Assembly (NCBI RefSeq): GCF_046119375.1
Contig: NW_027362765.1
Location: forward strand, 568,974,001 to 569,038,000
Direction of reading: 5' to 3'
DNA: 64,000 bases
Source: Phyllobates terribilis
Lineage: Eukaryota
The notes under the pieces are model-generated. The model did no database searches and was not told the origin of the DNA. It was given only the letters and a program-made list of their open reading frames with translations. This document shows positions 737 to 51,196 of this stretch, one piece after another; positions within the stretch are counted from its first letter, which is position 1; every line of letters starts with the position of its first letter. The position numbers and the translations under genes were made by a program.

Positions 737-739
737 ACC

Positions 740-4099: not shown

Positions 4100-4129
4100 A
4101 TTTGAATTCTGTCAGATATGCTCATTTCT

Positions 4130-4523
4130 AGTGAGGAGTTCTCTAAATTTACTTATCAATGAATTGAGCGAACCAAGTGGATGATTTAGTAAGAACAATG
4201 TTTAGACTGTTACTGTTATAAATATAAAATATAACGTATATAATACTTTTATTAACCAGACCTATGTATCTACACATAGAAAATCATGTTCTTAGTAAAT
4301 TATTCCCATGCACGTATGGAAAGGGAAGTGATTTGCATTACATTCTTATACAGTCCACACCTTTCCTTCAAGGTAGGCAAATGATAAAAATCTAATTGTA
4401 GTTAATAGTCAGTTAGAATTCCTACTGGTTAATTTGGCATCTGATTGCTCAACATGACAGTAGACCAGTATGTTAAGCATCTATCTAATAAGCTTCAATA
4501 TCCATCTATTGTGACCTTGTATA
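4130..4523 (+). promoter_or_regulatory. Paralogous copy of the promoter module found upstream of the Cys/Pro-rich gene; cut by a repeat
   Basis: Shares GAAAGGGAAGTGATTTGCATT (octamer 4331-4338), TTAGAATTCCTA..GGTT and CAGTAGACC...TGACCTTGTAT with 37990-38212. Confidence 0.6.
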
Positions 4524-5210
4524 CAGTGTCCATTTTAGGACATGATTAGATATCAAAGTCAAACATCAGAATAATGTCAGTTTTGAGCTAAATACTCTGA
4601 GAACTGACTTTGATATCTGACTTAGATATGTGACTTTGATATGTGACTTTGGCATCTGACTTTTACAACTGATAATAGTAATAAAATAAATAACTCACTG
4701 TCCACACTGGAACTTGAACTCAAAGCTCTTTGTTTAGAAACCACTGCCCGTACACTTATCATTAAGCTATACACTCAGTGTTATAATCATTGGCATTCTA
4801 TTTGGTTATGTGATTTTCATTGTAAATGTGTCTAAAACGCATTGGGACTTTCACACAGACCTCCTCCAAGCCAAATTCAAATGATGTTTGATTTTGATGT
4901 TTGACTTTCATATCTGACTTTCTTCACACATCAGAATCATAATGACTTTTAGACACCCTGAGTATTTTCATGGTTGATCCCATAAGCCAAGAAAAACTAC
5001 CACCTGTTGTGACTTGACTCTATGGCTAAATGGTAAAGCTTGAGCTCCTGGGTTCAAAAACCAGGTGCAGAAGAAGAGTTTTATTTTTATTTTGTTAATT
5101 AACCTGGCTAGCACACAAACTACAGTGATGTTTTACTTTTAATATCTGACATTCTTATTGTCATCCTGATGTCTTAAGAAAGAGTTTCAGACACGCTGTG
5201 TAAATCACAT
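4524..5210. repeat. Unclassified dispersed repeat with 13-bp TGACTTTGATATG-type tandem units
   Basis: 4524-4660 matches 61805-61960; about 4864-5075 matches 63790-64000 inverted. Confidence 0.65.
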
Positions 5211-22425: not shown

Positions 22426-22449
22426 TGATTGGTTAAAATCACCTCACCA

Positions 22450-22740: not shown

Positions 22741-22854
22741 ATGCGCAAGACACATAAGTGCCTTCTTGCTGCACTACCTGCAACATGACCCTCATATTGT
22801 CAGAATTCGAAGTAATCATGACTACTGGGTTGCCACACTCTTAGATCCCCCAAA

Positions 22855-24223: not shown

Positions 24224-24295
24224 TACATGTGCTTTTCCACAAAACACCAGAGGTTCACGTAGTGAATCTTACAGTTCTAACTTGCCAACCGTGGT

Positions 24296-24748
24296 CTGTA
24301 TGGAGTTGTTCAATAAAGGGCCCAAAATTAAGATAACATAGATGGGAGAGGTCTCTATGAATAGGAATTCCTAAGTATTTGATACCCTGTGAGGGCCAGA
24401 CAAAGGGAAAGTTGGACTGGATGGAATCCTGTATGGATTTGGGCAGGGAGACATCGAGGGCCTCAGACTTCGCTGCATTGATTTTAAAATTTGACCATGT
24501 AACAAAGTGATCTATTTCAGCCATAACAGCATGGATGGATATATGTGATTGAGTGATATATACTAGGACATCATCAGCAAATAGAGAGCACTTGTACTCG
24601 GTGCCTCCCACCTCAATCCACCTAATATTGGGGTTATGGCGAATTGATGAGAGCAGGTGCTCCGTCACTAGGATGTATAAGAGAGGGGACAGAGGACATC
24701 CCTGCCTTGTCCCATTGGTGATTGTGAAAGGTGATGAAAATGTTCTGA
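24296..24748 (-). pseudogene. L1-clade reverse transcriptase fragment
   Basis: FTITNGTRQGCPLSPLLY...LFADDVLVY...KYLGI motifs. Confidence 0.88.
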
Positions 24749-24807
24749 TGCACCCCCTGGGCCTTGGGACACCCGGAGCCGGACCCTTTTTGGTGGATGC
24801 TGGTGGT

Positions 24808-25959: not shown

Positions 25960-26234
25960 GTTCCATTTATCTTCAGCCTAGGTGACGTATTGTGATACAG
26001 GGCCGTGATTTTGGCTATAAAAGGGTCCCCTAGACCCCTACCCCAAGCTTTTTAAGAGAATCATATATGGCGTGCCAGGAGACTCTATGGAATGCTTTCT
26101 CAGCATCCAACGAGAGTATCTAATTACAAATTTTTAACTGCATCTAGCCCAGGAAATACTTTGTGCCTAGTAGCAGTGTCTGCTAGTCAGCGGATTATCC
26201 CGGCTGTTAAGCAAGCTACACCACCTGTTGTTTG

Positions 26235-26496
26235 GACACTTAATTTTTTCAAAGGAAATGCTTCGGGACCACGGGATACTCAGTGAAGAGCATCAGGAGG
26301 CACCCCAAGGCATAGGGGCTGGGACTGGCAGTAGGATGCCTTGCGGTGGACAGCCGAGCTCGATCCTTATAAAAGCTTTTTAACTGCAGCAGCTTTAGTG
26401 GACGCTACTGGAGCTGGAATTACGCGGCTGCTGGCATGAGACTTGCCCTCCAATAGATCCTTGTAAATGGATTTAAAGTGTATTCATTCAAATTAG
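26235..26496 (-). pseudogene. Diverged 18S rRNA fragment (~260 bp)
   Basis: Reverse complement reads ATTGGAGGGCAAGTCT..TGCCAGCAGCCGCG.TAATTCCAGCTCCA...GCAGTTAAAAAGCT...CCCGAAGC...TTTGAAAAAATTA, i.e. conserved 18S core plus the V4 start. Confidence 0.9.
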
Positions 26497-27000
26497 AGAG
26501 ACAATTTAAATTAAAAAGCTTAGAGCTGCCTCCACCACAGGGGGGCTCGCTCGACCCACCAGCGGACAGGCACCAGTATTGGGAGAGGGGGGCTGGCCGT
26601 CTGGGTTCACCGCGGCTCTGGCACAAACCCGGCGACACGGAGGTGGCACGGGCAGGAGCGGACTGAACGTGTCGGCTTCTCACTTTTTGGATTTTAGAAG
26701 GGCATGACATGCCTATATCTGTGTCTCCCCTCCTTTTACTCCTCCACCTCTTTTCTTTTCGCATGACTATATGTACTTGTCACTTTTCCATGTGTTAGTT
26801 GTGTCTTCTGAGCAGTTTGTCAGCTTTTGGACACCTTTGAAGGTGTTTTCTATGTGTTTCTATGTGTTTTTGTTTGCCTGCCATTGGTTTTAACGGTGTT
26901 CGAAGGTGTTCGACGAACAGTTCGACGAACAGTTCGGCAAACACACGGGTGTTCGACGAATCGAACCGAACTCGAACACTACGGGGGTGGCTCAACACTA

Positions 27001-29380
27001 CTCGTTGGCCCAGGCTATACGTCAGAACGTATTGCACAAGGGCTTGTCGGTGCTGCCACAGTCACTGCAACATGTGCAGAGTTGAATTCCACCGTGTCGG
27101 CACATCGCATTTCAGCCGGTGAACTGGCAGGCCCAATGACTTCTGTAGAGATGTAAGTCGTTGAGCTGCGGGATGCGAACGGCGGAAGTGAGCACACAGT
27201 GACCATGTCCTCTGCAGAAAGCCATATAGTCCGGGAAAGTGGGCTAAAAATTGCTGGACAACCAGGTTCAACACATGAGCCATACAAGGCACGTGTGTGA
27301 CATTGCCCCGGCTAAGGGCCGCACCCAGGTTTGCAGCATTGTCGCACACAGCCTTCCCTGGTTTCAGGTCCAGTGGAGACAACCATTCATGAAACTGGGT
27401 CTCCAGAGCTGACCACAACTCCTCAGCTGTGTGACTCACATTTCCCAGACATTTCAAAATTAACAGCACCTGATGCCGTTGAGTCCTGCTGCCAGCATAG
27501 TAAGGAGGTGTGCAGGATTCCTTCTGCGCAGTTAGAAAGCGGGTGGCATTACCAGACAGGCTTTGGGTGCAGGTGGAGGACCGAGAGGAGGTTGAGGAGG
27601 CAGAAGCAGTGGAGGAACTTTGACATAAAGAGGATTGACGTACAACTCGTGGGGACGGCAAGACTTGGACAGCAACCCCTTGTCCTGCTGTCACCATAGT
27701 TACCCAGTGCCCAGTCAGCGACATGTAACGCCCCTGTCCATGCCTACTCGTCCAAGTGTTTGTGGTGAAATGCACCCTGTCACACACAGAGTTTCTCAAA
27801 GAAGCGGTGATGTTGTGTGCGACATTCTGGTGTAGCGCAGGCACACCTTTCTTTGAGAAGTAGTGCCGACTGGGCATCTGGTACTGGGGCACTGCAACGG
27901 ACATAAGGTCTCGAAAATCCTCTGTGTCCACCAGGCAGAAAGGCAGCATTTCTGTAGCCAACAGCTTGCAGATGGTGAAATTCAACCTCTTAGCTTTGTC
28001 GTGGCTAGGAGGAAATGGTCTTTTACTTGTCCACATCTGAAGGACCGAGGGCTGGCTGTTGTGCTTAGACGGGGTTGAGTAGGGTGTCCCCAGCAAACTG
28101 CTGGTCTGTGAGGAAGATGCAGGTGGAAAAGTTAGGTTGCCTTGATCCAAAGGTGGTGCTCTCGATGTCGGAGAGTGCTCAACACCAGCTGGTGTTTCCA
28201 CTTCCAAATGAAATGATGACCTGCCAATCACACTAGCTGTTGCATGTAAAGAGGTGGCAGGTCTGCGTCCAAAAACATGTGTGACTGCTGTCCCCCCAGT
28301 CACAGAGGATGAAGAGGCTGCGGATGCACAAGATGGGGCAGACGGTGGTTAGCCCGACCCGCTAGGCCGCATTGTAGCATATTGAGCTTCCCATTGCAAC
28401 TTATGCTTCATATCCATGTGACGGTTCATGCATGAAGTACTCAAACTATGGATTTTTTGGCCTCTACTTAGCTTTTGGTGACAAATATTACAGATAACAC
28501 GAGTTGGGTCATCCTTTTCGATCTGAAAAAATGCCCAGGCTATGCAAGGCTTAGAGCCCATGCGACCTGAAGAGCCACCACAACTTGTGGTCAGAGGCAG
28601 AGTTGTGGTTGAGGATGCAGTTGTTTACGTGCTTCCACTACTCTGTCTCTGTCCAGGAAAGCACAGCCTAACCTCGTCGTCAATAGTATCCTACTCCACC
28701 TCCTCTGCTGACATCATCGACTGGCTGACTGTGGGTTGAGAGTAAGTGGGATCTCCAACCTCGTCATCATCACCCTGTGTGCTCTCACACCCGTCGTCCT
28801 CAGAGCCAACCTGTTCCTGCCCTGACCGAAAAGTCAAGTTGTTGCTCCAATCAGGTATTTGTGTCTCATCATCGTCTTCATCATTGTCTCCACCAACAGG
28901 AGTTACAGTTTGGGAATGAGGGTCTACCTTATGCTCAGAACCTTCTACATCTGGTCCTGAATCCGACTCATAAAGATTCTGGGCATCAGTGCAGATCATT
29001 TCCTCGTCTGGATTAACAGAAGCTCTGGAGCAGACCTCCGTTGCCCAGGCTATAGTATGAGTGAACAGCTGAGCAGACTCAACCATCTGTGTTACCCCAT
29101 ACTCAGACGGGCAGCTGGAGACTTGGGAGCTGTGAGGAAGCAAGTGCGATTGGGGTGACACCTCTGAGGACTGGAGTATTTGTGATGTTGAAGTTGATGT
29201 AGAGGAGAGCCCACTTGAAGGAGCACTTGATATCCGTTGAAGCACCTGATGTTTTTGTGCCTCATCTGGAATTTGTAGCGATGGGTGTGTCCGTAAGAAA
29301 GGGATCGTATCACATTGTCCACGAAAAGACGTAGACATCTTAGTTTGGCTGGAAGATGGTCTTTCTTCTGCAGATGTTAC
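27001..29380 (-). pseudogene. Older hAT copy: transposase N-terminal/central part; 5' end missing
   Basis: ORF pieces 27062-28303, 28349-28561 and 28691-29392 are collinear with the transposases of copies A and B. Confidence 0.9.
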
Positions 29381-29769
29381 TTTCCCCCCCACCGCGGGGG
29401 GGCTCGACCCACCAGCGGATGACAGGCACCAGTATTGGGAGAGGGGGGATGGCCGTCAGGGTCCACCGCGGCTCTGGCACAAACCCGGCGACACGGGTAG
29501 GAACGGACTGGCCGTGTCGTCTTCGCACTCCAGCGTAGTCCCTCTGCCCTCTCGCGCCCGTAACCTCAAAGGGATGCGCAAGTGGCTTTTCTTCCCAGGG
29601 CTGTTTACTGCCCAGCAGAAACGTGGGGGAGCTCAGGTCAGCCTTCCACTGTACTCCCTTACCTCCCTCGCCCTCTTTCCTTTGCCCATTCTCCATATAA
29701 CCCTTCGGCTCTGTGGTGTCTGCTCTCCCTCCAGCTCTCTCCTTCTCACAGGTGGACTAACGCGTGTAT

Positions 29770-31559: not shown

Positions 31560-34170
31560 CTTTCCTCCAGAAGTAGAAGATGCCCCCTTGTCCTCGTCTC
31601 AGGCCTCAGAGTAATAAGATCAGTAGAAAGGTCTTTGTACTGTCCCCTCATATACTGTACTTGTACATAGTAATAAGATCACCCCTAAGCCTTCATTTTT
31701 CCAAACTAAATAACCCCCAGTGTAATAATCTGTCTTGGTATTGCAGACCACCCAGTCCTCTAATAACCTTGGTCGCTCTTCTCTGCACCCGCTCTAGTTC
31801 AGCTATGTCTTTCTTATACACCGGAGACCAGAACTGTACACAGTATTCTAAGTGTGGTCGCACTAGTGACTTGTATAGAGGTAATATTATGCTCTCATCA
31901 TGAGCACCTTTTTTAATGCACCCCAATGTTTTATTTGCCTTTGCAGCAGCTGCCTGACACTGGCCACCAAACGTGAGCTTGTCGTCCACCAATACACCCA
32001 GGTCTTTTTCATTTTTTTCCAGTGTTTTACAATAAAGCAGATAATTATACATTTTATTTCCTCTGCCCAAGTGCATTACCTTACATTTAACCCCATTAAA
32101 GCTCATTTGCCATTTATCAGCCCAAGCTTCTAGTTTACATAGATCCTCCTGTAATATAAAATTGTCCTCCTCTGTATTTATTATCTTGCAGAGTTTAGTG
32201 TCATCTGCAAATATTGAAATATTACTCTGTATGCCCCCTACAAGGTCATTAATAAATACGTTAAAAAGAAGCGGGCCCAATACTGACCCCTGTGGTACCC
32301 CACTGTTAACTGTGACCCAGTCTGAGTGTGTTCCATTAATAACCACCCTTTGTTTCCTATCACTGAGCCAGTTCTTAATCCACTTACATATATTTTCCCC
32401 TATCCACATTGCTCTCATTTTATGTATCAACCTTTTGTGTGGAACCGTATCAAAAACTTTTGCAAAGTCCATATACACTACATCAACTGCATTTCCTTGG
32501 AACAGTCCGGAACTTACCTCTTCATAAAAGCTGATCAGATTGACAGGAACGGTCCCTCGTAAACCCATGTTGATATTGGGTCATGAGATTATTCTTCTTC
32601 AGATACTTTAGTATGGCATCTCTTAGGAAATCCTCCAGGATTTTACCCACAGTAGAGGTTAAGCTTACTGGCCTATAATTTTCAAGTTCGGTTTTTGCCC
32701 CCTTTTTGAATATTGGCACCACATTTGCTATACGCCAGTTGTGTGGTACAGACCCTGTTATTATGAAATCTTTAAAGCTTAAAATTAATGGCTTATCTAT
32801 GACTTTACTTAATTCCTGCAGTACTCGCGGGTGTATCCCATCTGGGCCCGGGGATTTTGTCAACTTTAGCGATGTTTAGAAGCCGCCGTATTTCCTGCTG
32901 GGTTAAGCAAGTGACATTTAATGGAGAATTTTTGTTATCACTGATCATGTATTCTGTCATGCGATTTTCTTGTGTAAATACTGTTAAAAAAAAATCATTT
33001 AGTATATTGGCTCTTTCCTCACCCTCATCCACCATTTCACACAGACTATTTTTAAGGGGGCCAACACTATCATTTTTTTGTTTCTTACTATTTATACAGT
33101 TAAAGAATATTTTGGGGTTATTTTTACTTTCTCTGGCAATGAGTGTCTCTGTCTCAATCTTTGCTGTCTTGATTTTGTTTTTACAGAATTTATTTAATTT
33201 TCTGTATTTATTTAATGCCTCATCACTACCTACTTGCTTTAGTTCTCTAAATGCTTTTTTTTGTCACTTATTGAGCCCATTACAGCTCTATTTAGCCATA
33301 GTGGTTTCCTCCTATTTCTAGCATGTTTATTCCCATAGGGTATATATTGTGCACAGGTCCTATTCAGGATGCTAATAAATATCTCCCATTTACTTTGTGT
33401 AGTTTTATGTCTCAGGATATCGTCCCAGTTTATTGCACAAAGATCATCTCTCAACCGTTGTAAATTTGTCTTCCTGAAGTTTAGTGTCCTTGTAACCTCA
33501 CTACTACACATCTTATTAAAGGATACATGAAAACGTATTATTTTGTGATCACTATTACCCAAGTGACCCCCAACTCGTATATTTAATATGTGGCCTGTTG
33601 GTTAATATTAGTTCTAGCAGTGCCCCCCTTCTTGCTGGGTCCTGAACCAGTTGTGAAAGGTAATTGTCTCTCATAGTTGTCAAAAACCAATTATCTTTGC
33701 TGGAACTATAGGTTTCTGTTCCCCAATGTATTTCAGGGTAGTTAACCCCCATAATAATGACTTCTCCTTGAGTCGCTGCTTCATCTATTTGCTTTATGAG
33801 GATATTCTCTGCTGCTTCCATTATTTTTGGAGACTTATAACAAATCCCTATCAGTAATTTAATATTTTTTTCCCCTCCCCTTATCTCCACCCACAGGGAC
33901 TCTACATTTTCATCAGGTTCACATATATTCTCACGCAAGATGGATTTTAAGAATGATTTTACATATAAACACACACCCCCCCTCACTTGTTTGCACGGTC
34001 ATTTCTGAACAGACTATAGCCTTGTAAATTAACTGCCCAGTCATGGCTCTTGTTCAGACATGTCTTAGATATCCCCACCATGTCACAATTATTTACCAAC
34101 AAAATTAATTCTAATTCCTCCATTTTGTTGGTGAGGCTTTTGGCATTAGTGTACATGCATTTTATGTATC
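31560..34170 (-). pseudogene. CR1 ORF2 (APE endonuclease + RT), frameshifted
   Basis: CMYTNAKSL, GGVCLYVK, SDHKII, KSPGPDGIHP, GVPQGSVLGP, FADDTK motifs. Confidence 0.92.
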
Positions 34171-36310: not shown

Positions 36311-37109
36311 TAGGGTTACGGCACACTTTTATCCTGCGCTCTACGCTGAGCACCTACATAGGAGTTTTTGTGTAAATCTCAGAAATACATGATTCAGAAG
36401 GAACCTACAACAGAAGTTTCACTATAATGAAGCAGATGGAGACACTGTGGACACCGTCTGTCCTATGATCCGTTGGCGTCTGTCCTTTTAAGCATGCATA
36501 AAAGCACGATCAACCACAGTTTTGTGCACCTCTGAACAGAGTCCATACGGAGTAATAGTAATTTAAGCCCAGGAATGGTTTGAAAATGAATAAACTATCA
36601 TACTCTCCTAGCCCTTTACCTATCCCTGATGCCAAGGCTCCCCATTGGTTCTCTGCAGGCTCCTAAGGCCCCACTCCAGATCTGATCTCCTATTCATTTG
36701 TAGCCAGTGATTTGCCCCATAATGCCACCATTGTGGGGAGTGACATGTGCTATTATGTCATAATGTTAAAATGTGCATTTTTTGTTTAGGTGCACTGGGA
36801 AGGTTGGAGAAAAGTGAAAATAAGCCTGGATCATATGATTATGAGTGCTAAAGCATAAGAAAGTTTGACCAAAAATAAATATCAGAATCAGAATTTCTTT
36901 CACCATTGGGTGATTTCTCATCACCTTCTTTGCTGACAATGCAGCTCCTCTGAAGTGAGACGGAGGCAAATTTTCACCACCTAATAACAAATGCAATGAG
37001 ACCAGCATGGATGCTTAAAGTGTCCCAATTTAACCACATACTATACTTCTATTTCACATATCTTTTGTACTAAGTCAAATGAATAAATAAATTAGGTCAC
37101 ATCTAATAT

Positions 37110-37370
37110 AGTTTCTAAGGTTTTCTTATCAATGAATTGTGTGAACCAACTGGACGTAACAAAAAACACTACATTTACAGTATGCATAGATAACAATCCT
37201 CATTTAATATGTATATTAATAAATTCTAAGTATCTACTCATATGCAAATATTAGTAAATGATTCCCATGCATGTAAGGAAAGGGAAGTAATTTGCATTAC
37301 ATAATTATACATTACACATCTAATTGTAGTGAAATAGTTAATTAGAATTCCTAATGGTTTATTTGGCATT
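37110..37370 (+). promoter_or_regulatory. Upstream duplicate of the octamer/ETS module
   Basis: CTTATCAATGAATTG, ATGCAAAT (37222-37229), GGAAAGGGAAGTAATTTGCAT and TTAGAATTCCTA shared with 4130-4450 and 37840-38110. Confidence 0.55.
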
Positions 37371-37839
37371 TGAATATTTCTTTATTTTACATGGCTAAGA
37401 TAATTGATAAGACATTTTATTATGGAGATGAGGGGCATTTGGATTTATATGAGCTTGTAATTGTATTCCTGTTTATTAAACTGAAAATTAATAAAAACAA
37501 TTATTTGATTAAAAAAACAAGCTTACCTGAGTAAAAAAACCATATGATTATAAATACTAAAGCAAAGGAAAGTGGAACCCAAAACTGAGATCAAAGTGAA
37601 TATTTTTTTAACCTTTGGGCAATTTCTCATTACCTTTGTTGCTGACAGGGGATCTCATCAGGGGAGTTTAGTCTTAGTCAGATTCTCCCCTTCTAATAGC
37701 AAAGGCAATGGGACTAACATTGACTCTTCCAGTATCCCACCGCAGCCACATAGTATGCTTCTGTATTACATTCTCTCTTGTACTAAATAAACTGTAATAT
37801 GTTTGGTAGGGATTTTTCTATGGTTTACTTACTACTAAT

Positions 37840-38248
37840 AATTTAAATGAACTAACTAGCAGGACATGTAGTAATAATAATGGTTAGACTGTTGTAGAAT
37901 ATATGACTATAGCTACCCATAACTAATGTGTTTATTAATTAGTTTTAAGTTTCTACTCATATACAAAGTCATTATTTTAGTAAATGGGTCACACGAGGAA
38001 AGGGAAGTGATTTGCATTGCATACTTTTACGGTCTACACCTTTCCTTAAGGGGATGCAAATCATAGAAATATAATTGTAGTAAAATAGACGATTAGAATT
38101 TCTATTGGTTTATTTTGTATCTGATAATTTGCTTATCATTACCAGTAGACCTGTATATATATATAGCACCTTTCTACTGAGCTGAGGTATCTATCTATTC
38201 TGACCTTGTATCATCATTCAGACATCTACCACATCACCAGAGACAACC
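37840..38248 (+). promoter_or_regulatory. Proximal promoter/5' UTR: ETS-like GGAAGT, two octamers, TATA
   Basis: GGAAAGGGAAGTG, ATTTGCAT 38010-38017, ATGCAAAT 38054-38061, TATATATATATA 38154-38165, then ACAACCATG. Confidence 0.6.
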
Positions 38249-38276
38249 ATGTCGGCAAAGGGACAGTGCAAAGACC
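38249..38276 (+). CDS. Coding exon 1 of a small Cys/Pro/Gln/Lys-rich protein (MSAKGQCKD)
   Basis: ACCATG Kozak context; donor C|GTAAGT, phase 1. Confidence 0.75.
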
Positions 38277-38954
38277 GTAAGTGCCTTCTGAATGAAATTT
38301 GATTTATGTATTAGTATAGAATCCAATATATTTTATACATATAAATGGAGATGATGAATTATTAGTATCACATTAGTTGTATTCAGTGATGTAGATGGAA
38401 ATCAGAGCTGAATATTACATTTTTTGGCGTGTCTAAATGGGTTGACTTGAAAACAATAAATACAACATTGTATAACAATTCGATTTGGCCAGAGTGTGCT
38501 CAACTCCACTATTTATATGGATACAGCTCTAACATATGCTTAGCTTTATATATGGGTTTGCCAATATAATAAGTTAGGGACAACCTTCTTCATGGATTTT
38601 TAAAAGCATTCACAATAATTCTATCCATGGGTGAGAACCACTATGGTGGTCATTTATGTCCAATCTAATAGACAGTTATAGAAGCAGTAACCTCCAATGC
38701 CAGTACGGCCCCTGGGCTGCTGCACACATAGTACTGCATCTGGTTATTTATGCATGCTTTATTAGATTTATTATTATTGTGTTGTATAAGACAATAAGTC
38801 AATATTTCTAGCAGGATTAATGCCAAACTTGCACCAATTAATTTACAATCAAATTTTTTATTTTAACCTAAGAAAATCAAATGTTTTTCACGTAATGAAA
38901 TTAATTCATGTTTTCATGACCTTCTCTGCTATAATCATAACTGGCTTTTTTCAG

Positions 38955-39032
38955 CATGTGCCCCACAGCCTGTCTGCCAGGACCAAGCTCCCAAATGCTG
39001 CCCAGATCCATGTCCACCAGTTATTTGCCAAG
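38955..39032 (+). CDS. Coding exon 2 (PCAPQPVCQDQAPKCCPDPCPPVICQ)
   Basis: Acceptor TTTTTTCAG, donor G|GTATGA; 78 nt, phase 1-1, open frame. Confidence 0.8.
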
Positions 39033-39239
39033 GTATGAAACTTAATAGAACATGGTATATTTGTCTAGTTCTATCTGTAAGATTTTTCTAACACTGATTT
39101 ATAATTATGAATTTTCTTAATAAACAAAAAAAAATAATGTGCAAATTACCTGGAAGCTTTTGTAAATGTGTTATCCAGCTCTAGGAAGCGAAGCCACGTC
39201 CTAGTTTGCACAGAATGCAAAAAATACAAAGAAAAAACA

Positions 39240-39590
39240 CAAAATTTTAGCTTGGTTTAAGTTGGTATACATGAAGCACATAAATGCATGATTCACAATG
39301 GCCATGAATCAGAAAAACCTACAAGAAGCAAAATGAACATAAACCCTGCTGTAAATAAATAAAAAGCAAGTGCATTTAAATAAAATCGGGTTCTTAGTAA
39401 CACTGTTTTTGAACAAAAATAGTATAATAGCTTTCCTACCGTGACAAGGTGAACCCGTTCCGGAAAGTCCTACACTGTCTAATATTAAAAACCTTTGCTT
39501 CTTGTAGGTTTTTCTGATTCATGGCCATTGTGAAACATGCATTTATGTGTTGCATGTATACCAACTTAAACCAAGCTCAAATTTTGTGTT
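39240..39590. mobile_element. Foldback/MITE with ~95-bp arms inside intron 2
   Basis: AGCTTGGTTTAAGTTGGTATACATG...CCTACAAGAAGCAAA is inverted at ~39494-39585. Confidence 0.8.
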
Positions 39591-39838
39591 TTTTCATTTA
39601 TATAAAGGTCTAGCCCCTGTCAGGCACTAGTAATTAAGGGGTCCATCTGTCACAAAAGATAAAACCAATATTAAATTGGCTAATGTTGTTATATAGATCT
39701 TGTATTGGAAATAACAAGGTATTTTTTAAATTCAGGCTAAACATTTCCTATGTGCTTAGTTTTGTATTAATTTAGTTGAACATATTGAAATATTACCATG
39801 GTTTCCAACAATCTTTAAAACATTTTTTTGCATATTAG

Positions 39839-39927
39839 ATCCATGCCAAAAAACTGATCCCTGCCAGAATCAAGATGTTTCTCAGAAAATCAATGTTTGT
39901 CAAAAAGAAAGTGTCAAGAAGTGTTAA
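39839..39927 (+). CDS. Coding exon 3 (DPCQKTDPCQNQDVSQKINVCQKESVKKC*)
   Basis: Acceptor TTTTTTTGCATATTAG; phase matches exon 2; TAA at 39925-39927; total CDS 195 nt = 64 aa + stop. Confidence 0.78.
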
Positions 39928-40047
39928 AACCTTTCTGTATCACTGAAACATCAGTATTGATTAATGAAAGTAACTGTTCTTTGCTCTCGCTATTCTGTCT
40001 TTATTAATGTGAAATACTTCACGTCTTGTACATCTTCTCATTCACTT

Positions 40048-40053
40048 ATTAAA
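40048..40053 (+). terminator. Candidate polyadenylation signal ATTAAA
   Basis: 120 nt after the stop codon, followed by GT-rich sequence. Confidence 0.45.
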
Positions 40054-41970
40054 AGCATTCTCCAGATTAAGTGTATGCGTGAGTTATTAGAGTATTTCTA
40101 ACCAATTACTTTCCATAACATTTCCCCCCATTAATAGCCAGGCACATATAAGTGTGGTGGCTACAGCTTCTGGTCATTTGGTCCAGCAATCATGTCTACA
40201 ACATTATTATGTATCCGATGCTTCCTGAATACTATTGCCCCAATGAATCAAAGCAATTTTGTTATAATTTTGGAGTAAATTGCTTAAAATGTAGCAATAT
40301 TTTTGCACAAAAAATGGTGAAAATGGGCAGAGCTGGATTGGTACGTGGGAGTAGTGGGGTGCGTGACACCGCAGGTTGTCTAATTTTTGACAAGCTGTGA
40401 TGTTCCCTTTACCCAAAATCTTACCCCTGTCAGGGACTAGAGTAACATTTCTACAGTTGTGCACATGGGCGCACACCATTACTCAGATGCTCCTAATTCA
40501 TAGGACATCTTAATGAATAAGGAGCTTCTGACTCCAACACTATCCCCTCATCAAGACTGGACTGCTAAATGTGCAGCAATTAGTAAGAAAAAGTACTAAA
40601 AACTGGCACTGCCTCTTCTGCGGAGAAGTTCCTTCCATTTTACAGCTGCATGCTTGTCAATTAGACCATTTTAACGTATATTGCCTTTTGCCATAGTTAA
40701 GGCAATTAACCTAATTACAACTTCACTTTCAGTTGAAAACAACCTTTAATACATTTTATCTTAAATAACAAAACAACTGAGTTGCCTAAATCCAGATGTT
40801 ATGCCTACTGCTGTGTAGGTTTCATCCATTAAAACATATACATATTTGAAAGGTCTGAGTTAACATTTGAGTTCCTCTTTCACAGCATCCAAATAAATAA
40901 AAGTTGAAACACCAAGGAAAGACTGCAGTCGCAGTTGCATTGTTTTTTGTTTTATTATTGTTGCTTTACCAGGATTGGTCTTCAAATTAATTTTAGTAAA
41001 TGCCTTGAATAACTTGAAACCACATTTTTCTTTCCATGGCAAGTGCAGGGCAATAAAAAAACATCTAAAGTGTAAGCACCTCACCACACTTCACTGTAAA
41101 TATCAGCTTCCTGCTGCTTTATGATAATGGCTTGGAAGAAGTGGGTTAAGTGATTCTATCTGTAGGTGATCTGAATTTTAAGGATTTGAGTGCAGCCAGG
41201 TTGTAATAGAAAAAATGATCCCAGAAATCAGGGGGTGATGCTGCAATTACCACAGCTTTAGCCACTTACATCCCCTGATGACATTCTGCTTCCGTAGATA
41301 TGATGGGGATGTGACCACAGCTTTAGTGGCTGCTGCCACACTCATGTTCCTGCTTCCTGCATCTGAAGTCACCACTGTCACAGTCCATGCTTCTGAGACC
41401 ACTTCCTTTTGAAACAAGATGTCATCAGGGGGTGGTGATAGAAGCAGTGTGAGTGACACCAGCATCACCACCTCGTGACGATTCTTTCAGGCATTGATAA
41501 AAGTTGTGCAGTGGCACTGCTGTAATTTAGCCTGCTTTTATCACAACCCTTCGATGATGTTTCAAACTCCACTTAAACTAAAATAAAAATACATATAGAG
41601 AATAGCAGGATGGGGAAAATGGTAGGGAATTTTATAATAAAGTATTAATTGCTCAAGGGGTTAGGGCTTAAAGAGAGATAATTATAATGGGTGTTATAAG
41701 TGTTGGACTACCGATTTTAATAAGTGATATCTTTTACAGCTATTTGTGAAGGATCAATTTCAATTTGTGAGAATCGGCAAAAAAAATAAAATGCTGAGCG
41801 CCATTTCAAACTCTTCTAAAGAGTCAGTGACCGTGCTAATGGCGACAGGTTCAGACATACAGTTCCCCATAATGATCTACAGCTATCACATCACATAGTC
41901 AAGTGCACTCTAACAGTGGGCTATCACAAGCAGTATAAAAGAAAGGGGCTGGCCAATGAGCGCCACTTAA

Positions 41971-42523
41971 AGGAGTTTTCCCTTGAATAAAAGTTCTTTT
42001 TAATCAATAGATCCGGGAATGATAACTTACACAATTGAATGTATTTAAATATAATGTTCCTGTGCTGAGATAATCTTATAAATGTGCCCCTGCTGTGTCC
42101 TGTGTAATGGCTGTGTCTTACGTTGAACAGAACATGGTCTGATCATACCAAAGCTCCTGGGCAGGGGAGGAAGCAAAAGAGTATAGAGATATTTCAGCAC
42201 AGGATCACAGCAATTTTTTTTTTTTAAGTAAAGTAATGTTTAAACACAGGGAAGGGAGCAGGGAACTTTTTTACCTCACAAAAAGAATCAGCTGTGATCC
42301 CCTGCTTTAATGTCTGTATACTCTTTTGCTTCCTTCCCTGCCCAGGAGCTGTAGTATGATCAGACCATGTTCCTGCGCAGTCAGATGCAGCCGTTACACA
42401 GGGGAACATTTATAAGATTATCTTAGCACAGGAACATTTTATTTAAACACATCCAATTGTGGAAGTTATTATTATTCCTAGATCTATTGATTAAAATGAA
42501 CTTTTATTTGTGGGAAAATTCCT
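41971..42523. mobile_element. T2/Kolobok-type MITE with long inverted arms
   Basis: TTAA|AGGAGTTTTCCC...GGGAAAATTCCT|TTAA; arms of ~250 bp are imperfect reverse complements. Confidence 0.88.
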
Positions 42524-42527
42524 TTAA

Positions 42528-43551: not shown

Positions 43552-46160
43552 GGAGGATTGCATTCTACTGTATGGAGGCCGATGGGGAGTGAATTCTACT
43601 GTGTGACGGCCGATGGCGAGTGCATTCTACTGTATGGCGGCCGATGGCGAGTGCATTCTACTGTGTGACGGCCGATGGCGAGTGCATTCTACTGTATGGC
43701 GGCCGATGGCGAGTGCATTCTACTCTGAGGAGGCCGATAGGGAGTGCATTCTACTGTGTGGCGACCAATGGGAAGTGCATTCTACTCTTTGGCAGCCGAT
43801 GGGAAGTGCATGCTACTGTGTTGTGGCTGACGGGGAGTGCATGCTAATGTTTGGCGGCCGATGGGGAGCACATGCTACTGTGTAGAGACCGAAGTGGAGT
43901 GCAATATGCTGTGTGGAGGCCTATGGAGAGTGCATTATAATGTGTGGAGGCCGAAGGGGAGTGCATTATATTGCGTGGAGGCTGATGGGGAGTGCATTTT
44001 ACTGCGTGGAGGCCAATGGGTAGTGTATGCTACTGTATAGAGTCCGATGGGGAATGCATGCTTGTGTATGGAGGCCATTGGGGAGTGCATGCAGCTGTAT
44101 GGAGTCCAATGGGGAGTGCATGCCACTGTATGGAGTCCGATGGGGAGTGCATGCTACTGTATGGAGTCCGATGGGGAGTGCATGCTAATATATGGAGTCC
44201 TATGGTGAGTGCATGCTACTGTATGGAGTCTTTTGGGGAGTGCATGCTACTGTATGGAGGCCGATGGGGAGTGCATGCTACTGTATGGAGGCCGATGGGG
44301 AGTGCATACTACTGTATGGCGGCCGATGGGAGTGCATGCTACTGTGTTGTGGCCAATGCGGAGTGCATGCTAATGTTTGGTGGCCGATGGGGAGCACATG
44401 ATACTGTGTAGAGACCGAAGGGGAGTGCAATATGCTGTGTGGAGGCCTATGGAGAGTGCATTATAATGTGTGGAGGCCGAAGGGGAGAGCATTATATTGT
44501 GTGGAGGCTGATGAGGAGTGCATTTTACTGCGTGGAGGCCAATGGGTAGTGTATGCTACTGTATAGCATGTCGCTATATGGAGTCCGATGGAGAGTGCAT
44601 GCTACTGTATGGAGTCCTTTAGGGAGTGCATGAAACTGTATGGAGTCCGATGGGGAGTGCATGCTACTTTATAGAGTCTGATGGAGAGTGCATGCTACTG
44701 TATGGAGTCCGATGGGGAGTGCATGCTACTGTATGGAAGCCGATGGGGAGTGCATGCTACTGTATGGAGGCCGATGGGGAGTGCATACTACTGCATGGCG
44801 GCCGATGGGGAGTGCATGCTTCGGTGTTGTGGCCGATGGGGAGTGCATGCTAATGTTTGGTGGCCGATGGGGAGCACATGCTACTGTGTAGAGACCGAAG
44901 GGGAGTGCAATATGCTGCGTGGAGGCCTATGGAGAGTGCATTTAAATGTGTGGAGGCCGAAGGGGAGTGCATTATATTGTGTGGAGGCTGATGGGAAGTG
45001 CATTTTACTGTGTGGAGGCCATTGGGTAAGACTCGCTACTGTAAAGATTCCGATGGGAAATGCATTCTACTGTATGGAGGTCAATGGGGAGTGCATGCAA
45101 CTGTATGAAGTCCAATGGGGAGTGCATGCCACTATATGGAGTCCGACGGGGAATGCATGCTAATATTTGGTGGCCGATGGGGCGCACATGCTACTGTGTA
45201 GAAACCGAAGGGGAGTACAATATGCTGTGTGGAGGCCTATGGAGAGTGCTTTATAATGTGTGGAGGCCGAAGGGGAGAGTATTATATTGTGTGGAGGTTG
45301 ATGGGGAGTGCATTTTACTGTGTGAAGGCCATTGGGTAATGTATGCTACTGTATAGAATCTGATGGGAAATGCATGCTACTGTATGGAGGCCATTGGGGA
45401 GTGCATGCAGCTGTATGAAGTCCAATGAGGAGTGCATGCCACTATATGGAGTCCGATGAGGCGTGCATGCTACTGTATGGAGGCCAATGGGAAGTTTATG
45501 CTACTGTATGGAGTCCGATGGGGAGTGCATGCTAGTGTATGGAAGCCGATGGGGAGTGCATGCTACTGTATGGAGGCCGATGGGGAGTGCACACTACTGT
45601 ATGGAGGCCGTTGGGGAGTTCATTATACTGTATGGAGGCCAAAAGGGAGTGCATTATACTGTATGGAGGCCGATCGGGAGTGCATTGCACTGTATGAAGG
45701 CCGATGGGGAGTGCATGCAACAGTATGGAGGCTGTTGGGGAGTGCATTATACTGTATGGAGGCCAAAGGGGAGTGCATTATACTGTATAGAGGCCGAAGG
45801 GGAGTGCATTATACTGTATGGAGGCCAAAGGGGAGTGCATTATACTGTATGGAGGCCAATGGGGAGTGCATGCTACTGTATGGAGGCCATTGGTGAGTGC
45901 ATGCTACTGTATGGAGTCCGATGGGGAGTGCATGCTAATGTATGGCGTTCGATGGTGAGTTCATGCTACTGTATGAAGGCTGATTAGTAGTGCATGCTAC
46001 TGTATGGAGGCCGATGGGGAGTGCATGCTACTGTATGGAGGCCATTGGGGAGTGCATTATACTGTATGGAGGCTGAAGGGGAGTGCATTACACTGCATGG
46101 AGGCCAATGGGAGTGCATTATAATGTATGGAGGTCGATGGGGAGAGCATTTACTATATGG
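43552..46160. repeat. 31-bp minisatellite (~84 units) with higher-order blocks
   Basis: Unit ATGCTACTGTATGGAGGCCGATGGGGAGTGC; the ORF track shows a 31-aa period (3 units). Confidence 0.95.
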
Positions 46161-46487
46161 AGTATTTTATATTTTTAAGTTCAGCGTGGTCATCTGCTGA
46201 GGTTCTCCTACGTGTGCTATTAGGGTGCACCACCATAGTTGTTGTAATCAGGGTTTCCAGGTTAGGGACCCACTCAGAAGTTTCTCCATCCCAAATCAAA
46301 ACCCTAGCTACTCTTCAGATGACACCACTCTGTCCACTTCTATGGGAGCAGTGGTGTAATGTGTGACTCATCCACCATATTACTACTCCCATAGAAGTGA
46401 ACCAAGTGGGGTCACACATTATACCATTGCTCCCTGAGAAATGCGTAACCTTGCTCTGTCCAATTCTAAGGGAGCAGTGATGTAATA

Positions 46488-47186
46488 CAGGGTGGGTCAT
46501 TTATATGGATACACCTAAATTAAATGGGAATGGTTGGTGATATCTACTTCCTGTTTGTGGCACATTAGTATATGGGAGGGGGAAAACTTTTCCAGATGGG
46601 TGATGACCATGGCGGCCATTTTGAAGTTGGCCATTTTGGATCCAATTTTATTTTTTTCAATGGGAAGAGGGAATCTGTTTCAGATGTTGCACATCTCGTA
46701 TCTTCACAGCATAGACAATTGCCTTCAGATGACCCCAAAGATAAAAGTCTAAGGGGGTCAGATTGGGAGACTTTGGAGGCCATTCAACTGGCCCACGATG
46801 ACCAATCCACTTTCCAGGAAACTGTTCATGTAGGAATGCTCGGACCTGACACCCATAATGTGGAGATGTGCAGCATCTGAAACAACGGATACTGGAAGCC
46901 TGTGCTAGCATTTCTTCTGCGGTATTGCTATCAGTGTGGGAGAAGAGGTTTGCATTGACAATCCAACACAATGGGCAACACTTTGAACACATTTTATAAG
47001 TGTTCATAAACTTGAAAAAACTCATGAAAGAATAAAGTTATGTTAAAACCAAGTACACCATTGTTTTTCTTATGAAATTCTCAATAAAGTTGGATTCAAA
47101 ATGGCCGACTTCAAAATGGCCTACATGGTCACCACCCACCTGGAAAAGTTTCCCCCCTCCCATATCCATATAAATGGCCCACTCTG
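46488..47186 (-). mobile_element. Internally deleted Tc1/mariner element (DD37D/DD41D-like)
   Basis: TA|CAGGGTGGGTCATTTATATGG...CCATATAAATGGCCCACTCTG|TA; remnant FPGKWIGHRGPVEWPPKSPNLTPLDFYLWG. Confidence 0.88.
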
Positions 47187-49995: not shown

Positions 49996-50659
49996 TGTGT
50001 GACCCCGCTCTCCTCTGTCCACTTCTATGGGAGCAGTGGTGTAATGTAATAGACAATAAATACATGGTCTGTTATCTCTGTATAAGGCTCCTGCAGAGAC
50101 TTACACTGATATAGCAGAGCTGAACCAGTGATCAGAGCACAGCAGAGTTATGATTAGTGTTGAGCCACCCCCGTAGTGTTCGAGTTCGGTTCGGTTCGTC
50201 GAACACCCGTGTGTTTGTCGAACTGTTCGTCGAACTGTTCGTCAAACACCTTCGAACACCGTTAAAACCAATGGCAGGCAAACAAAAACACATAGAAACA
50301 CATAGAAAACACCTTCAAAGGTGTCCAAAAGCTGACAAACTGCTCTGAAGACACAACTAACACATGGAAAAGTGACAAGTACATATAGTCATGCGAAAAA
50401 AAAAGAGGTGGAGGAGTAAAAGGAGGGGGAGACACAGATATAGGCATGTCATGCCCTTCTAAAATCCAAAAAGTGAGAAGCCGACACGTTCAGTCCGCTC
50501 CTGCCCGTGCCACCTCCGTGTCGCCGGGTTTGTGCCAGAGCCGCGGTGAACCCTGACGGCCAGCCCCCCTCTCCCAATACTGGTGCCTGTCCGCTGGTGG
50601 GTCGAGCGAGCCCCCCTGTGGTGGAGGCAGCTCTAAGCTTTTTAATTTAAATTGTCTCT

Positions 50660-50925
50660 CTAATTTGAATGAATACACTTTAAATCCATTTACAAGGATC
50701 TATTGGAGGGCAAGTCTCATGCCAGCAGCCGCGTAATTCCAGCTCCAGTAGCGTCCACTAAAGCTGCTGCAGTTAAAAAGCTTTTATAAGGATCGAGCTC
50801 GGCTGTCCACCGCAAGGCATCCTACTGCCAGTCCCAGCCCCTATGCCTTGGGGTGCCTCCTGATGCTCTTCACTGAGTATCCCGTGGTCCCGAAGCATTT
50901 CCTTTGAAAAAATTAAGTGTCAAAA
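50660..50925 (+). pseudogene. 18S rRNA fragment (copy B)
   Basis: Same segment as 26235-26496, read in 18S sense on the + strand. Confidence 0.9.
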
Positions 50926-51196
50926 CTACAGGTGGTATAGCTTGCTTAACAGCCGGGATAATCCGCTGACTAGCAGACACTGCTACTAGGCACAAAGTAT
51001 TTTCTGGGCTAGATGCAGTTAAAAATTTGTAATTAGATACTCTCGTTGGATGCTGAGAAAGCATTCCATAGAGTCTCCTGGCACGCCATATATGATTCTC
51101 TTAAAAAGCTTGGGGTAGGGGTCTAGGGGACCCTTTTATAGCCAAAATCACGGCCCTGTATCGCAATACGTCACCTAGGCTGAAGATAAATGGAAC

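What the first reader, a model, noticed from the sequence alone, without database searches (positions are those of the whole stretch)
38249..39927. Hidden three-exon gene for a 64-aa SPRR/cornifin-like protein
Seen: canonical GT-AG sites with matching phase 1 join three exons into MSAKGQCKDPCAPQPVCQDQAPKCCPDPCPPVICQDPCQKTDPCQNQDVSQKINVCQKESVKKC (11 Cys, 10 Pro, 10 Gln, 8 Lys; repeated DPC motif), with TATA, Kozak and ATTAAA. No signal peptide is evident. It is absent from the ORF track. Established: amniote cornified-envelope precursors (SPRR, LCE, PRR9) have this composition and are transglutaminase substrates, but keep the CDS in one exon. Inference: an amphibian epidermal-differentiation-type gene with a multi-exon CDS, informative about skin barrier evolution; metal binding is an alternative role.
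Basis: partly seen in the sequence, partly recalled or inferred. Interest (0 to 1): 0.75.

Follow-up and report, generated by a model that had tools for sequence, protein, structure and literature searches.

The report
Unannotated frog AEDC-type cornification gene
A small three-exon gene for a 64-residue cysteine/proline/glutamine/lysine-rich protein really is present in this frog sequence, and it fits a family of amphibian skin-hardening genes (AEDC) first described in August 2026, so it is a new member of a known kind and not a new kind of gene.

Summary
The three-exon model is in the sequence exactly as described: exons 38249-38276, 38955-39032 and 39839-39927, GT-AG introns, both phase 1, 64 codons plus TAA. 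It is not chance. In 300 composition-matched simulated windows, none of 29,951 chance three-exon models exceeded 43% C+P+Q+K, against 61% here.

The window is anuran. Its hAT transposase matches dendrobatid frogs best.

- three coding exons, all phase 1;
- a short, low-complexity product;
- 45% C+Q+K, within the published 30-50%, and 17% Cys.

Two decayed copies of the gene's upstream module lie in the window, consistent with tandem duplication.

Homology and synteny (sncg/glud1) could not be shown. Exon-wise word searches, Pfam and a 1.8-billion-protein HMMER search all came back empty, and no flanking host gene was recognised. Expression is untested.

The resemblance to SPRR is compositional. 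A single coding exon, which defines SPRR-type genes, was tested and is not met. The metallothionein hallmarks are absent too.

Verdict: a probable, apparently unannotated AEDC-type gene (confidence about 0.7). It is a new member of a known kind, of modest interest.

The parts
37880..38154 (+). Proximal upstream module, the putative promoter. It carries two octamer motifs (ATGCAAAT at 38054-38061 on +, and at 38010-38017 on -).
   Evidence: The sequence was read and the octamer positions come. The module occurs three times in the window. The invariant core GGAAAGGGAAGT.ATTTGCATT is shown in alignment A1. Promoter function is an inference.
38155..38166 (+). TATA-like element (TATATATATATA), 83-94 nt upstream of the ATG. 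The transcription start is inferred near 38185-38195.
   Evidence: Searches show the element and show that no ATG lies between it and the start codon. The transcription start is inferred, not shown.
38249..38276 (+). Coding part of exon 1: 28 nt, 9 codons plus 1 base. The donor is ACC|GTAAGT.
   Evidence: GC is 0.54 against 0.31 in the flanks.
38277..38954 (+). Intron 1: 678 nt, GT...AG, phase 1.
   Evidence: The acceptor is preceded by a pyrimidine tract (0.71 pyrimidine at -20..-4).
38955..39032 (+). Exon 2: 78 nt, phase 1 in and phase 1 out. It holds 25 whole codons rich in Cys, Pro and Gln. The donor is AAG|GTATGA.
   Evidence: It is the only stop-free C/P/Q/K-rich 22-residue stretch in all six frames of the window. 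GC is 0.56.
39033..39838 (+). Intron 2: 806 nt, GT...AG, phase 1. It contains a MITE-like inverted repeat with arms at 39228-39332 and 39494-39598.
   Evidence: The inverted repeat is 95% complementary over 105 nt.
39839..39927 (+). Coding part of exon 3: 89 nt including the TAA stop. It starts with the repeated DPC unit.
   Evidence: The DNA motif GAYCCMTGYC occurs at 39005, 39838 and 39856. Competing acceptors at 39776 and 39214 are listed.
39928..40053 (+). Putative 3' UTR ending in ATTAAA (40048-40053), with a GT-rich stretch about 25 nt further on.
   Evidence: This is weak evidence, because AWTAAA occurs 173 times in the window.
37160..37420 (+). Tandem, decayed copy of the upstream module. 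The duplication unit is about 720 bp (36832-37400 against 37541-38136). It has two octamers (37242 on +, 37290 on -) and no exon 1.
   Evidence: (families D1, D2, D3 and D5, 74-80% identity), and alignment A1.
4260..4525 (+). Distal third copy of the upstream module. It reaches into the part that matches the 5' UTR. The TATA element is lost, no exon 1 follows, and a 13-bp repeat array comes next.
   Evidence: (77% over 69 nt, E = 2.9e-8), alignment A1, and the sequence read. I read it as the relic of a paralogue; a repeat element remains an alternative.

Best explanation
This is an intact gene of the AEDC (amphibian epidermal differentiation cluster) type in an anuran genome, probably of the poison-frog lineage. 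It is apparently unannotated.

Inferred mechanism:
- Transcription starts about 30 nt after the TATA-like element at 38155-38166, from a promoter module that carries two octamer motifs.
- Two phase-1 introns are removed.
- The mRNA encodes a 64-residue protein with no signal peptide. It is low in complexity and presumably disordered. Cys is 17%, and Pro, Gln and Lys make up another 44%.
- It contains three to four D-P-C-x(3-5)-C-Q units.

By analogy with characterised AEDC proteins, it would be made in differentiating keratinocytes of the epidermis or of hard cornified appendages. There it would be locked into the cornified material by disulfide bonds, and possibly by transglutaminase Gln-Lys bonds.

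Shown here: the gene structure, the composition, the non-chance nature of the model, the anuran host, and the duplicated upstream modules.

Inferred only: transcription, splicing, tissue, cross-linking, and common descent with AEDC/ADIRF.
For: (1) Exons, splice sites, phases and the stop codon were read directly.

(2) The model is far outside chance. None of 29,951 simulated three-exon models reached even 0.43 C+P+Q+K, against 0.61 observed. Exons 1 and 2 are GC islands.

(3) It matches the published family definition (PMC13487633). Most AEDC genes have three exons, all spliced in phase 1. Most AEDC proteins are under 100 aa, and Aedc1 is 57-63 aa. Proline, glutamine and cysteine contents are high, and C+Q+K is about 30-50%. 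Here the protein has 64 aa and C+Q+K is 45%. Its 17% Cys places it in the 'cysteine-enriched (>15%)' subset described in the bioRxiv preprint 10.64898/2026.09.30.755311.

(4) The host is an anuran. The best hits of the window's hAT transposase are Ranitomeya, Anomaloglossus, Dendrobates and Phyllobates.

(5) The upstream module is present three times, as expected for a family that grows by tandem duplication.

(6) There is internal repetition of the DPC unit and of its DNA motif. The AEDC paper reports amino-acid sequence repeats in many AEDC proteins.
Against: - No sequence homology to any protein could be shown. Pfam gave nothing at E<=10. The word searches with the exon-2 and exon-3 open frames found no candidate. 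phmmer of exon 2 against 1.84 billion representatives gave no hit at E<=0.001. These queries carried only 25-28 informative, low-complexity residues, so the blanks are weak. They do mean that homology rests on structure and composition alone.
- The defining synteny (between sncg and glud1) was not seen. No host gene other than this one was recognised in the 64 kb.
- Only one intact gene of the type is in the window, and there is no Gly-rich member.
- From my own knowledge, not tested here: a three-exon, phase-1/phase-1 layout with a 28-nt first coding segment is also the layout of vertebrate metallothionein genes. The layout alone is therefore not diagnostic.
- There is no transcript evidence.
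- Two alternative acceptors exist for the last exon.
Confidence: 0.7

Rival explanations
1. A real Cys/Pro/Gln/Lys-rich gene that is not an AEDC member. It would be an independent, lineage-specific origin of a cornification-type or other Cys-rich structural protein at another locus. It could be expressed somewhere other than skin, for example as a sperm or egg-coat associated Cys-rich protein.
For: Homology and synteny to AEDC are both unproven. Low-complexity cornification-type proteins have arisen several times independently (EDC, KRTAP, KRTAPL, AEDC; PMC13487633).
Against: The AEDC layout (three coding exons, both introns phase 1, about 60 aa) is matched exactly in an amphibian genome. An independent origin would have to converge on composition and on gene structure as well.
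Confidence: 0.12
2. An AEDC-type gene that is no longer used. It would be an open but silent relic within a decaying, transposon-invaded part of the cluster.
For: - Two other copies of the upstream module have lost their coding exons.
- The surroundings are almost entirely transposons and satellites.
- The word searches found no protein in the 5.8-billion-cluster collection sharing three 5-residue words with exon 2 or exon 3. That collection includes annotated proteomes of several dendrobatid frogs.
- The AEDC paper reports pseudogenised members.
Against: The reading frame, start codon, all four splice sites, the TATA-like element and a poly(A) signal are all intact. Short low-complexity genes are often missed by automatic annotation, and the AEDC authors had to correct many models by hand.
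Confidence: 0.1
3. A metallothionein-like metal-binding protein. Thiolate clusters formed by the 11 cysteines would bind Zn, Cu or Cd.
For: The protein is small, Cys-rich, free of aromatic residues and free of His. From my own knowledge, untested here: vertebrate metallothionein genes also have three exons, phase-1 introns and a 28-nt first coding segment.
Against: - Cys is 17%, against about 30% in metallothioneins.
- There is no C-x-C motif and only one CC pair.
- The 31% Pro+Gln is foreign to metallothioneins.
- Pfam found no family, including the metallothionein families, for the exon pieces at E<=10. The pieces are short, so this is weak.
Confidence: 0.04
4. Not a gene. The model would be a chance alignment of an ATG, splice-like dinucleotides and open frames, picked out by eye.
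For: There is no homologue, no transcript evidence and no annotation. A single C/P/Q/K-rich 22-residue stretch is not rare by itself: it arises about 0.65 times per simulated window. TATA and poly(A) motifs are common in AT-rich DNA.
Against: The whole three-exon model lies about 9 sd beyond the simulated distribution, and none of 29,951 chance models comes near it. The exons stand out as GC islands. The DPC unit recurs across the exon 2/exon 3 junction. The structure fits a published family found independently.
Confidence: 0.03

Closest known systems
AEDC proteins of amphibians, for example the short Aedc1 proteins and the cysteine-enriched members such as Bombina aedc15 (Sachslehner et al. 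2026, PMC13487633; preprint 10.64898/2026.09.30.755311)
   Same: - Amphibian host.
- Three coding exons, all phase 1.
- About 60 aa.
- Low complexity, with high Cys, Gln, Lys and Pro (C+Q+K 45%; Cys above 15%).
- No S100 domain and no signal peptide.
- Short internal repeats.
- Signs of local duplication.
   Different: Sequence similarity and the sncg-glud1 location are not shown here. At 64 aa the product is one residue longer than the reported Aedc1 range of 57-63. Only one intact gene lies in 64 kb, in transposon-rich DNA. The source lineage (apparently dendrobatoid) is not among the eight amphibians analysed in the paper.
ADIRF (adipogenesis regulatory factor), the proposed ancestor of AEDC genes
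   Same: The exon-intron layout is the same according to PMC13487633 (three exons, all phase 1). The product is small and presumably disordered.
   Different: The paper describes ADIRF and the ADIRF-like AEDC genes as a clade separate from the other AEDC genes. No alignment to ADIRF could be made here.
SPRR/cornifin, LCE and loricrin (single-coding-exon EDC genes of amniotes and caecilians)
   Same: The composition is similar (Pro, Gln, Lys, Cys), with short repeats. The proteins are cytosolic. The presumed role is the same: a cross-linked component of cornified cells.
   Different: - In those genes the whole CDS lies in one exon, preceded by a non-coding exon. Here it is split over three exons.
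- They sit between S100A genes.
- They are reported absent from frogs.
- The similarity is compositional, and the AEDC authors regard it as probably convergent.
Mammalian keratin-associated proteins (high-sulfur KRTAPs)
   Same: Short, Cys-rich, low-complexity proteins. They are proposed to act as a disulfide-linked matrix between keratin filaments. The AEDC literature uses this functional analogy for its Cys-enriched members.
   Different: KRTAP genes have a single exon, are confined to mammals, and lie in the keratin type I cluster.
Vertebrate metallothioneins
   Same: The size is about 60 aa, there are no aromatic residues, and the protein is Cys-rich. From my own knowledge, the three-exon, phase-1/phase-1 layout is also shared.
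   Different: This protein has about half the Cys density, no C-x-C motif, and is rich in Pro and Gln. Pfam gives no match for the exon pieces.

Membership tests
AEDC (amphibian epidermal differentiation cluster; PMC13487633) | The gene lies in an amphibian genome. | tested here: met
   The hAT transposase ORF (54635-56947, minus strand) has its best hits in frogs: Ranitomeya variabilis 84% (partial), Anomaloglossus 70% (partial), Dendrobates, Phyllobates, Engystomops, Lithobates and Xenopus. The species itself was not identified.
AEDC (amphibian epidermal differentiation cluster; PMC13487633) | Three exons carrying the CDS, all spliced in phase 1, the same layout as ADIRF. | tested here: met
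   The coding segments are 28, 78 and 89 nt. Both introns are GT-AG and phase 1. This was read from the genomic sequence only, and no transcript was available.
AEDC (amphibian epidermal differentiation cluster; PMC13487633) | A short, low-complexity product rich in Cys, Gln, Lys and/or Pro, with C+Q+K about 30-50% in the glycine-poor group. | tested here: met
   The product has 64 aa: C11, Q10, P10, K8. C+Q+K is 45% and Cys is 17%.
AEDC (amphibian epidermal differentiation cluster; PMC13487633) | Location in the cluster flanked by sncg and glud1, syntenic with ADIRF. | tested here: inconclusive
   No sncg, glud1 or other host gene was recognised in the 64 kb. Pfam on the ten longest non-transposon ORFs gave no family. 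The window is too small and too repeat-rich to decide, and only ORFs of at least 45 aa in the non-repeat parts were inspected.
AEDC (amphibian epidermal differentiation cluster; PMC13487633) | Sequence similarity to other AEDC/ADIRF proteins. | tested here: inconclusive
The exon-wise searches were blank. The pieces have only 25-28 informative residues. No published AEDC sequence was available to the tools, because the supplement is not held.
AEDC (amphibian epidermal differentiation cluster; PMC13487633) | Membership of a tandemly duplicated gene array. | tested here: inconclusive
   There is one intact gene. The upstream module is present three times: 4260-4525, 37160-37420 and 37880-38154. 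That fits decayed paralogues, but a repeat element is not excluded.
AEDC (amphibian epidermal differentiation cluster; PMC13487633) | Expression specific to skin or cornified appendages. | not testable with these tools
   No frog RNA-seq or transcript collection can be searched by DNA here.
SPRR / LCE / loricrin (single-coding-exon EDC genes) | The entire CDS lies in one exon, preceded by a non-coding exon. | tested here: not met
   The CDS is split over three exons. No single open frame holds it: the longest open frames around the exons are 32, 74 and 55 codons.
SPRR / LCE / loricrin (single-coding-exon EDC genes) | Location in the EDC, between S100A genes. | tested here: inconclusive
   No S100 or SFTP-like ORF was noticed in the window. 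Published work reports no SEDC genes in frogs.
Metallothionein | About 30% Cys, arranged in C-x-C, C-C and C-x-x-C motifs that form metal-thiolate clusters. | tested here: not met
   Cys is 17%, with no C-x-C motif and one CC pair. The Cys positions are 7, 11, 17, 24, 25, 29, 34, 38, 44, 56 and 64. Pfam gives no family for the exon pieces at E<=10.

The most novel reading that the evidence does not exclude
The gene does not lie in the sncg-glud1/ADIRF locus. On this reading, frogs of this lineage carry a second, independently arisen or transposed locus of three-exon Cys/Pro/Gln/Lys-rich cornification-type genes. Its upstream module, with paired octamer motifs, would have been copied along with it, and the whole would sit inside a 13-kb inverted duplication. 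That would be a further case of convergent origin, or of dispersal, of cornification genes in amphibians.
Probability: 0.1. Interest if true: 0.6.

Novelty: new member of a known kind. Interest (0 to 1): 0.35.

Why it matters
The AEDC family was defined in 2026 from eight amphibian species. Its authors call explicitly for wider taxon sampling.

This gene appears to be an unannotated, Cys-enriched member from a neobatrachian frog with a very large, transposon-laden genome, apparently of the poison-frog lineage. It shows three things:
- Such genes escape automatic annotation.
- They can be recognised from raw sequence by their three-exon, phase-1 layout.
- The cluster can be stretched and eroded by transposons, leaving promoter relics.

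If the paired octamer motifs of the conserved upstream module prove functional, they would offer a handle on how these genes are switched on in differentiating keratinocytes.

The finding does not open a new question. It adds a data point to one just opened.

Tried and rejected
- **Pfam.** A scan of the exon-2 and exon-3 peptides and of their open frames found no family at E<=10.
- **Word searches.** Searches of the 5.8-billion-cluster collection with the exon-2 open frame (window:38867-39088:+) and the exon-3 open frame (window:39760-39924:+) found no candidate sharing three 5-residue words. This also suggests that the product itself is not among the annotated proteins of that collection in the 30-130 aa range.
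- **Full HMMER search.** Exon 2, given as a 30-codon reference, was searched against 1.84 billion representatives. There were no hits at E<=0.001, as expected for 25 low-complexity residues.
- **Further family members in the window.** No other C/P/Q/K-rich open stretch was found. The only Gly-rich stretches lie in hAT transposon copies. No diverged copy of exon 1, 2 or 3 appeared by blastn or tblastn.
- **Flanking marker genes.** The ORF lists and a Pfam scan of the ten longest non-transposon ORFs showed nothing. I did not scan all 199 smaller ORFs, because that would have needed very long reference lists.
- **A second gene downstream.** A TATAAG plus ATG at about 40150-40195 gives only a 46-codon open frame with no family match. 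I rejected it for lack of any support.
- **Supplement of the AEDC paper.** It contains the protein sequences but is not held, so no direct alignment to published AEDC proteins was possible.
- **Rfam.** A gathering-threshold scan of the whole window found nothing in or near the gene.
- **Joined product, left out.** It was used only inside local scripts that read window coordinates, to count residues and to enumerate models.
- **Other notes.** No contig taken for human was met. The window contains no N.
Full report
**Observation**

The stretch 38249-39927 was read directly and dissected by script.
- The start ATG is at 38249, in the context ACAACCATGT.
- Exon 1's coding part (38249-38276) is 28 nt and ends at the donor ACC|GTAAGT.
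- Exon 2 (38955-39032) is 78 nt. It lies between the acceptor ggcttttttcag| and the donor AAG|GTATGA.
- Exon 3's coding part (39839-39927) is 89 nt. It follows the acceptor tttgcatattag| and ends in TAA.
- Both introns interrupt a codon after its first base (phase 1).

Counting residues over the three coordinate ranges gives 64 codons: 11 Cys, 10 Pro, 10 Gln, 8 Lys, 6 Asp, no aromatic residue and no His.

A TATA-like run lies at 38155-38166, with no ATG between it and the start codon. The first plus-strand AWTAAA after the stop is ATTAAA at 40048. Such hexamers are frequent here (173 in the window), so it counts for little. The N-terminal nine residues are hydrophilic, so no signal peptide is evident.

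**Is it more than chance?**

Exon 2 is the only stop-free 22-residue stretch in any of the six frames with at least 4 Cys and at least 8 Pro+Gln+Lys. One such stretch is not unusual by itself. Second-order Markov simulations of the window give 0.65 per window.

I therefore enumerated every model of the same form: an ATG exon, an internal exon and a terminal exon, both introns phase 1, consensus-like donors and acceptors, introns of 70-1500 nt, and 50-100 codons. The results were as follows.
- The real window holds 68 such models on both strands. Only those built on the finding's exons 1 and 2 are rich in these residues.
- In 300 simulated windows that keep the local composition of each 2-kb block, 29,951 chance models arose.
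- Their C+P+Q+K fraction averaged 0.19 (sd 0.047), and the highest was 0.43. The observed value is 0.61.
- The criteria were set after seeing the model, but the gap is too large for that to matter.
- Exons 1 and 2 are GC islands (0.54 and 0.56) within 0.31 GC introns.

Two other acceptors give open models: 39776 gives 85 aa and 39214 gives 50 aa, the latter beside a MITE-like inverted repeat.

**What organism?**

The window is mostly transposons and satellites. The longest hAT transposase ORF (54635-56947, minus strand) finds its best relatives in frogs:
- Ranitomeya variabilis, 84% over a partial match;
- Ranitomeya imitator, 83% over a partial match;
- Anomaloglossus baeobatrachus, 70% over a partial match;
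- Dendrobates, Phyllobates, Engystomops, Lithobates, Hyperolius and Xenopus.

The host is an anuran, probably of the poison-frog lineage. The species was not determined.

**What is it?**

A literature search turned up Sachslehner et al., Mol Biol Evol, August 2026 (PMC13487633). [quoted passage not shown] From:
- Most AEDC genes have three exons, all spliced in phase 1, like ADIRF, from which they are thought to derive.
- Most products are under 100 aa, and Aedc1 is 57-63 aa.
- The products have low complexity and are rich in proline, glutamine and cysteine. Cys+Gln+Lys make up about 30-50% in the glycine-poor group.
- The cluster lies between sncg and glud1.
- Expression is specific to skin and cornified appendages. 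AEDC proteins were detected in Xenopus stratum corneum and clawed toes.
- GenBank's annotation pipeline had labelled some members 'small proline-rich protein', 'KRTAP' or 'loricrin' on the basis of composition.

A preprint (10.64898/2026.09.30.755311) singles out cysteine-enriched members (above 15% Cys). It treats them as likely disulfide cross-linkers analogous to mammalian keratin-associated proteins.

The present model has the same layout. It has 64 aa, 45% C+Q+K and 17% Cys. It fits the family on the three features that could be tested.

**Signs of duplication**

The roughly 270-nt module just upstream of the TATA element occurs three times.
- The first copy lies next to the gene (37880-38154).
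- The second is a tandem copy about 720 bp upstream (37160-37420). It belongs to a duplicated unit, 36832-37400 against 37541-38136, at 74-80% identity.
- The third lies 34 kb away (4260-4525). It still aligns into the part corresponding to the 5' UTR (77% over 69 nt, E = 2.9e-8), but it has lost the TATA run and has no exon 1.
- The gene-proximal and tandem copies each carry two octamer motifs (ATGCAAAT/ATTTGCAT). These account for four of the nine octamers in the window.
- A core GGAAAGGGAAGT.ATTTGCATT is invariant in all three copies.

I read the extra copies as relics of paralogues, which would fit a tandemly expanding family. A dispersed repeat is not excluded. No other coding exon of the type exists in the window.

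**What could not be shown**

*Homology.* Pfam finds nothing for the exon pieces. The word-index search finds no candidate for the exon-2 or the exon-3 open frame. A full phmmer pass of exon 2 over 1.84 billion representatives gives no hit at E<=0.001. With 25-28 informative low-complexity residues per query, these blanks say little about distant kin. They do suggest that the product itself, and close orthologues of 30-130 aa, are not among the annotated proteins of that collection, which includes several dendrobatid proteomes.

The joined 64-residue product was not given to any search, look-up, alignment or fold tool, and was handled only inside local counting scripts. The sequences of the published AEDC proteins are in a supplement that is not held.

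*Synteny.* No sncg, glud1, S100 or any other host gene was recognised.

*Expression.* No frog transcript data can be reached with these tools.

**Mechanism**

The gene is most likely transcribed from the TATA-bearing module and spliced as modelled. The product would be a small, cytosolic, disordered protein. In differentiating keratinocytes it would be fixed into the cornified cell content or envelope through disulfide bonds, and possibly through transglutaminase Gln-Lys bonds. Cys makes up 17% of the residues, Gln 16% and Lys 12.5%.

Structure and composition are shown. Everything about expression and cross-linking is inferred from the characterised family members.

**Comparison with known kinds**

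- *SPRR, LCE, loricrin.* These work in the same way but are single-coding-exon EDC genes. That defining feature is tested here and not met. Such genes are also reported absent from frogs. 'SPRR-like' is therefore a description of composition only.
- *Metallothionein.* From my own knowledge it shares the three-exon, phase-1 layout and the size, so the layout alone is not diagnostic. Its hallmarks are absent, however: about 30% Cys and C-x-C motifs.
- *KRTAPs.* These are single-exon genes confined to mammals.

**Verdict**

This is most likely an apparently unannotated, cysteine-enriched AEDC-type gene in a frog lineage not covered by the founding paper. I put the confidence at about 0.7, and it is a new member of a known kind.

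The remaining probability is split as follows:
- a non-AEDC gene of similar design, 0.12;
- a silent relic, 0.10;
- a metal-binding protein, 0.04;
- chance, 0.03.

Interest is modest at 0.35. It would have been high before August 2026.

Noticed in passing
window 13776-27003 (+) and 60085-50152 (-): A very large inverted duplication, with arms of about 10-13 kb at 96-98% identity. The arms contain hAT copies, a Tc1-like fragment, an RT fragment and the 110-bp satellite. It brackets the 23-kb segment that holds the gene. It could be a real palindromic segmental duplication or an assembly artefact.
   Followed up: partly
window 14690-18612 and 58444-59169: A 110-bp satellite: 35.6 copies at 93% identity, with a higher-order period of 221/331 bp. 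A shorter array of 6.6 copies lies in the opposite orientation in the other arm of the inverted duplication.
   Followed up: no
window 43555-46162: An array of 84 copies of a 31-bp unit (GGAGTGCATGCTACTGTATGGAGGCCGATGG) at 79% identity, with strong G-over-C skew (0.42). The period is not a multiple of three, so the long ORFs listed there are artefacts of the repeat.
   Followed up: no
window 18729-22425, 27062-29392 (-), 54632-58327 (-), 12560-13759 (-): At least four copies or fragments of one hAT (BED zinc finger + hAT dimerisation) transposon. The copy at 54632-58327 is nearly intact but split into two ORFs. The closest proteins are annotated 'ZBED4/6-like' in dendrobatid frogs.
   Followed up: partly
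window 26191-26554 (-) and 50609-51025 (+): Two fragments of about 400 nt score above Rfam's gathering threshold for eukaryotic SSU rRNA (69-71 bits). The match is stretched over the whole model, and both lie inside the arms of the inverted duplication. They are probably an rRNA-derived piece carried by a repeat.
   Followed up: no
window 1-737 and 3362-4100: A pair of direct repeats of 737 nt at 95.7% identity, 3.36 kb apart, in GC-rich DNA (0.54-0.60). They look like the two LTRs of a retroelement.
   Followed up: no
window 39228-39598 and 41967-42527: MITE-like inverted repeats. One lies inside intron 2 of the gene (105-nt arms, 95% complementary, 161 nt apart). A nested set of three arm pairs lies 2 kb downstream.
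   Followed up: no
window 31693-33986 (-): LINE-type reverse-transcriptase and endonuclease ORFs, broken into several frames. Tc1/mariner-type transposase fragments lie at 23493-23888 (-), 53481-53867 (+), 46660-47037 (-) and 62715-63351 (+). I judged these from the translations only.
   Followed up: no
window 38010-38061 and 37242-37297: Paired octamer motifs (ATTTGCAT ... ATGCAAAT) in inverted orientation, 44-48 bp apart, conserved between the gene-proximal module and its tandem copy. From my own knowledge, octamer sites bound by POU2F factors drive some mammalian keratinocyte differentiation genes. This is untested here.
   Followed up: partly
window 4594-4672, 61889-61961, 63690-63772: Short arrays of a 13-bp unit (TGACTTTGATAAG-like) at three places. 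One lies directly after the distal promoter relic. They are probably sub-repeats of one transposon family.
   Followed up: no
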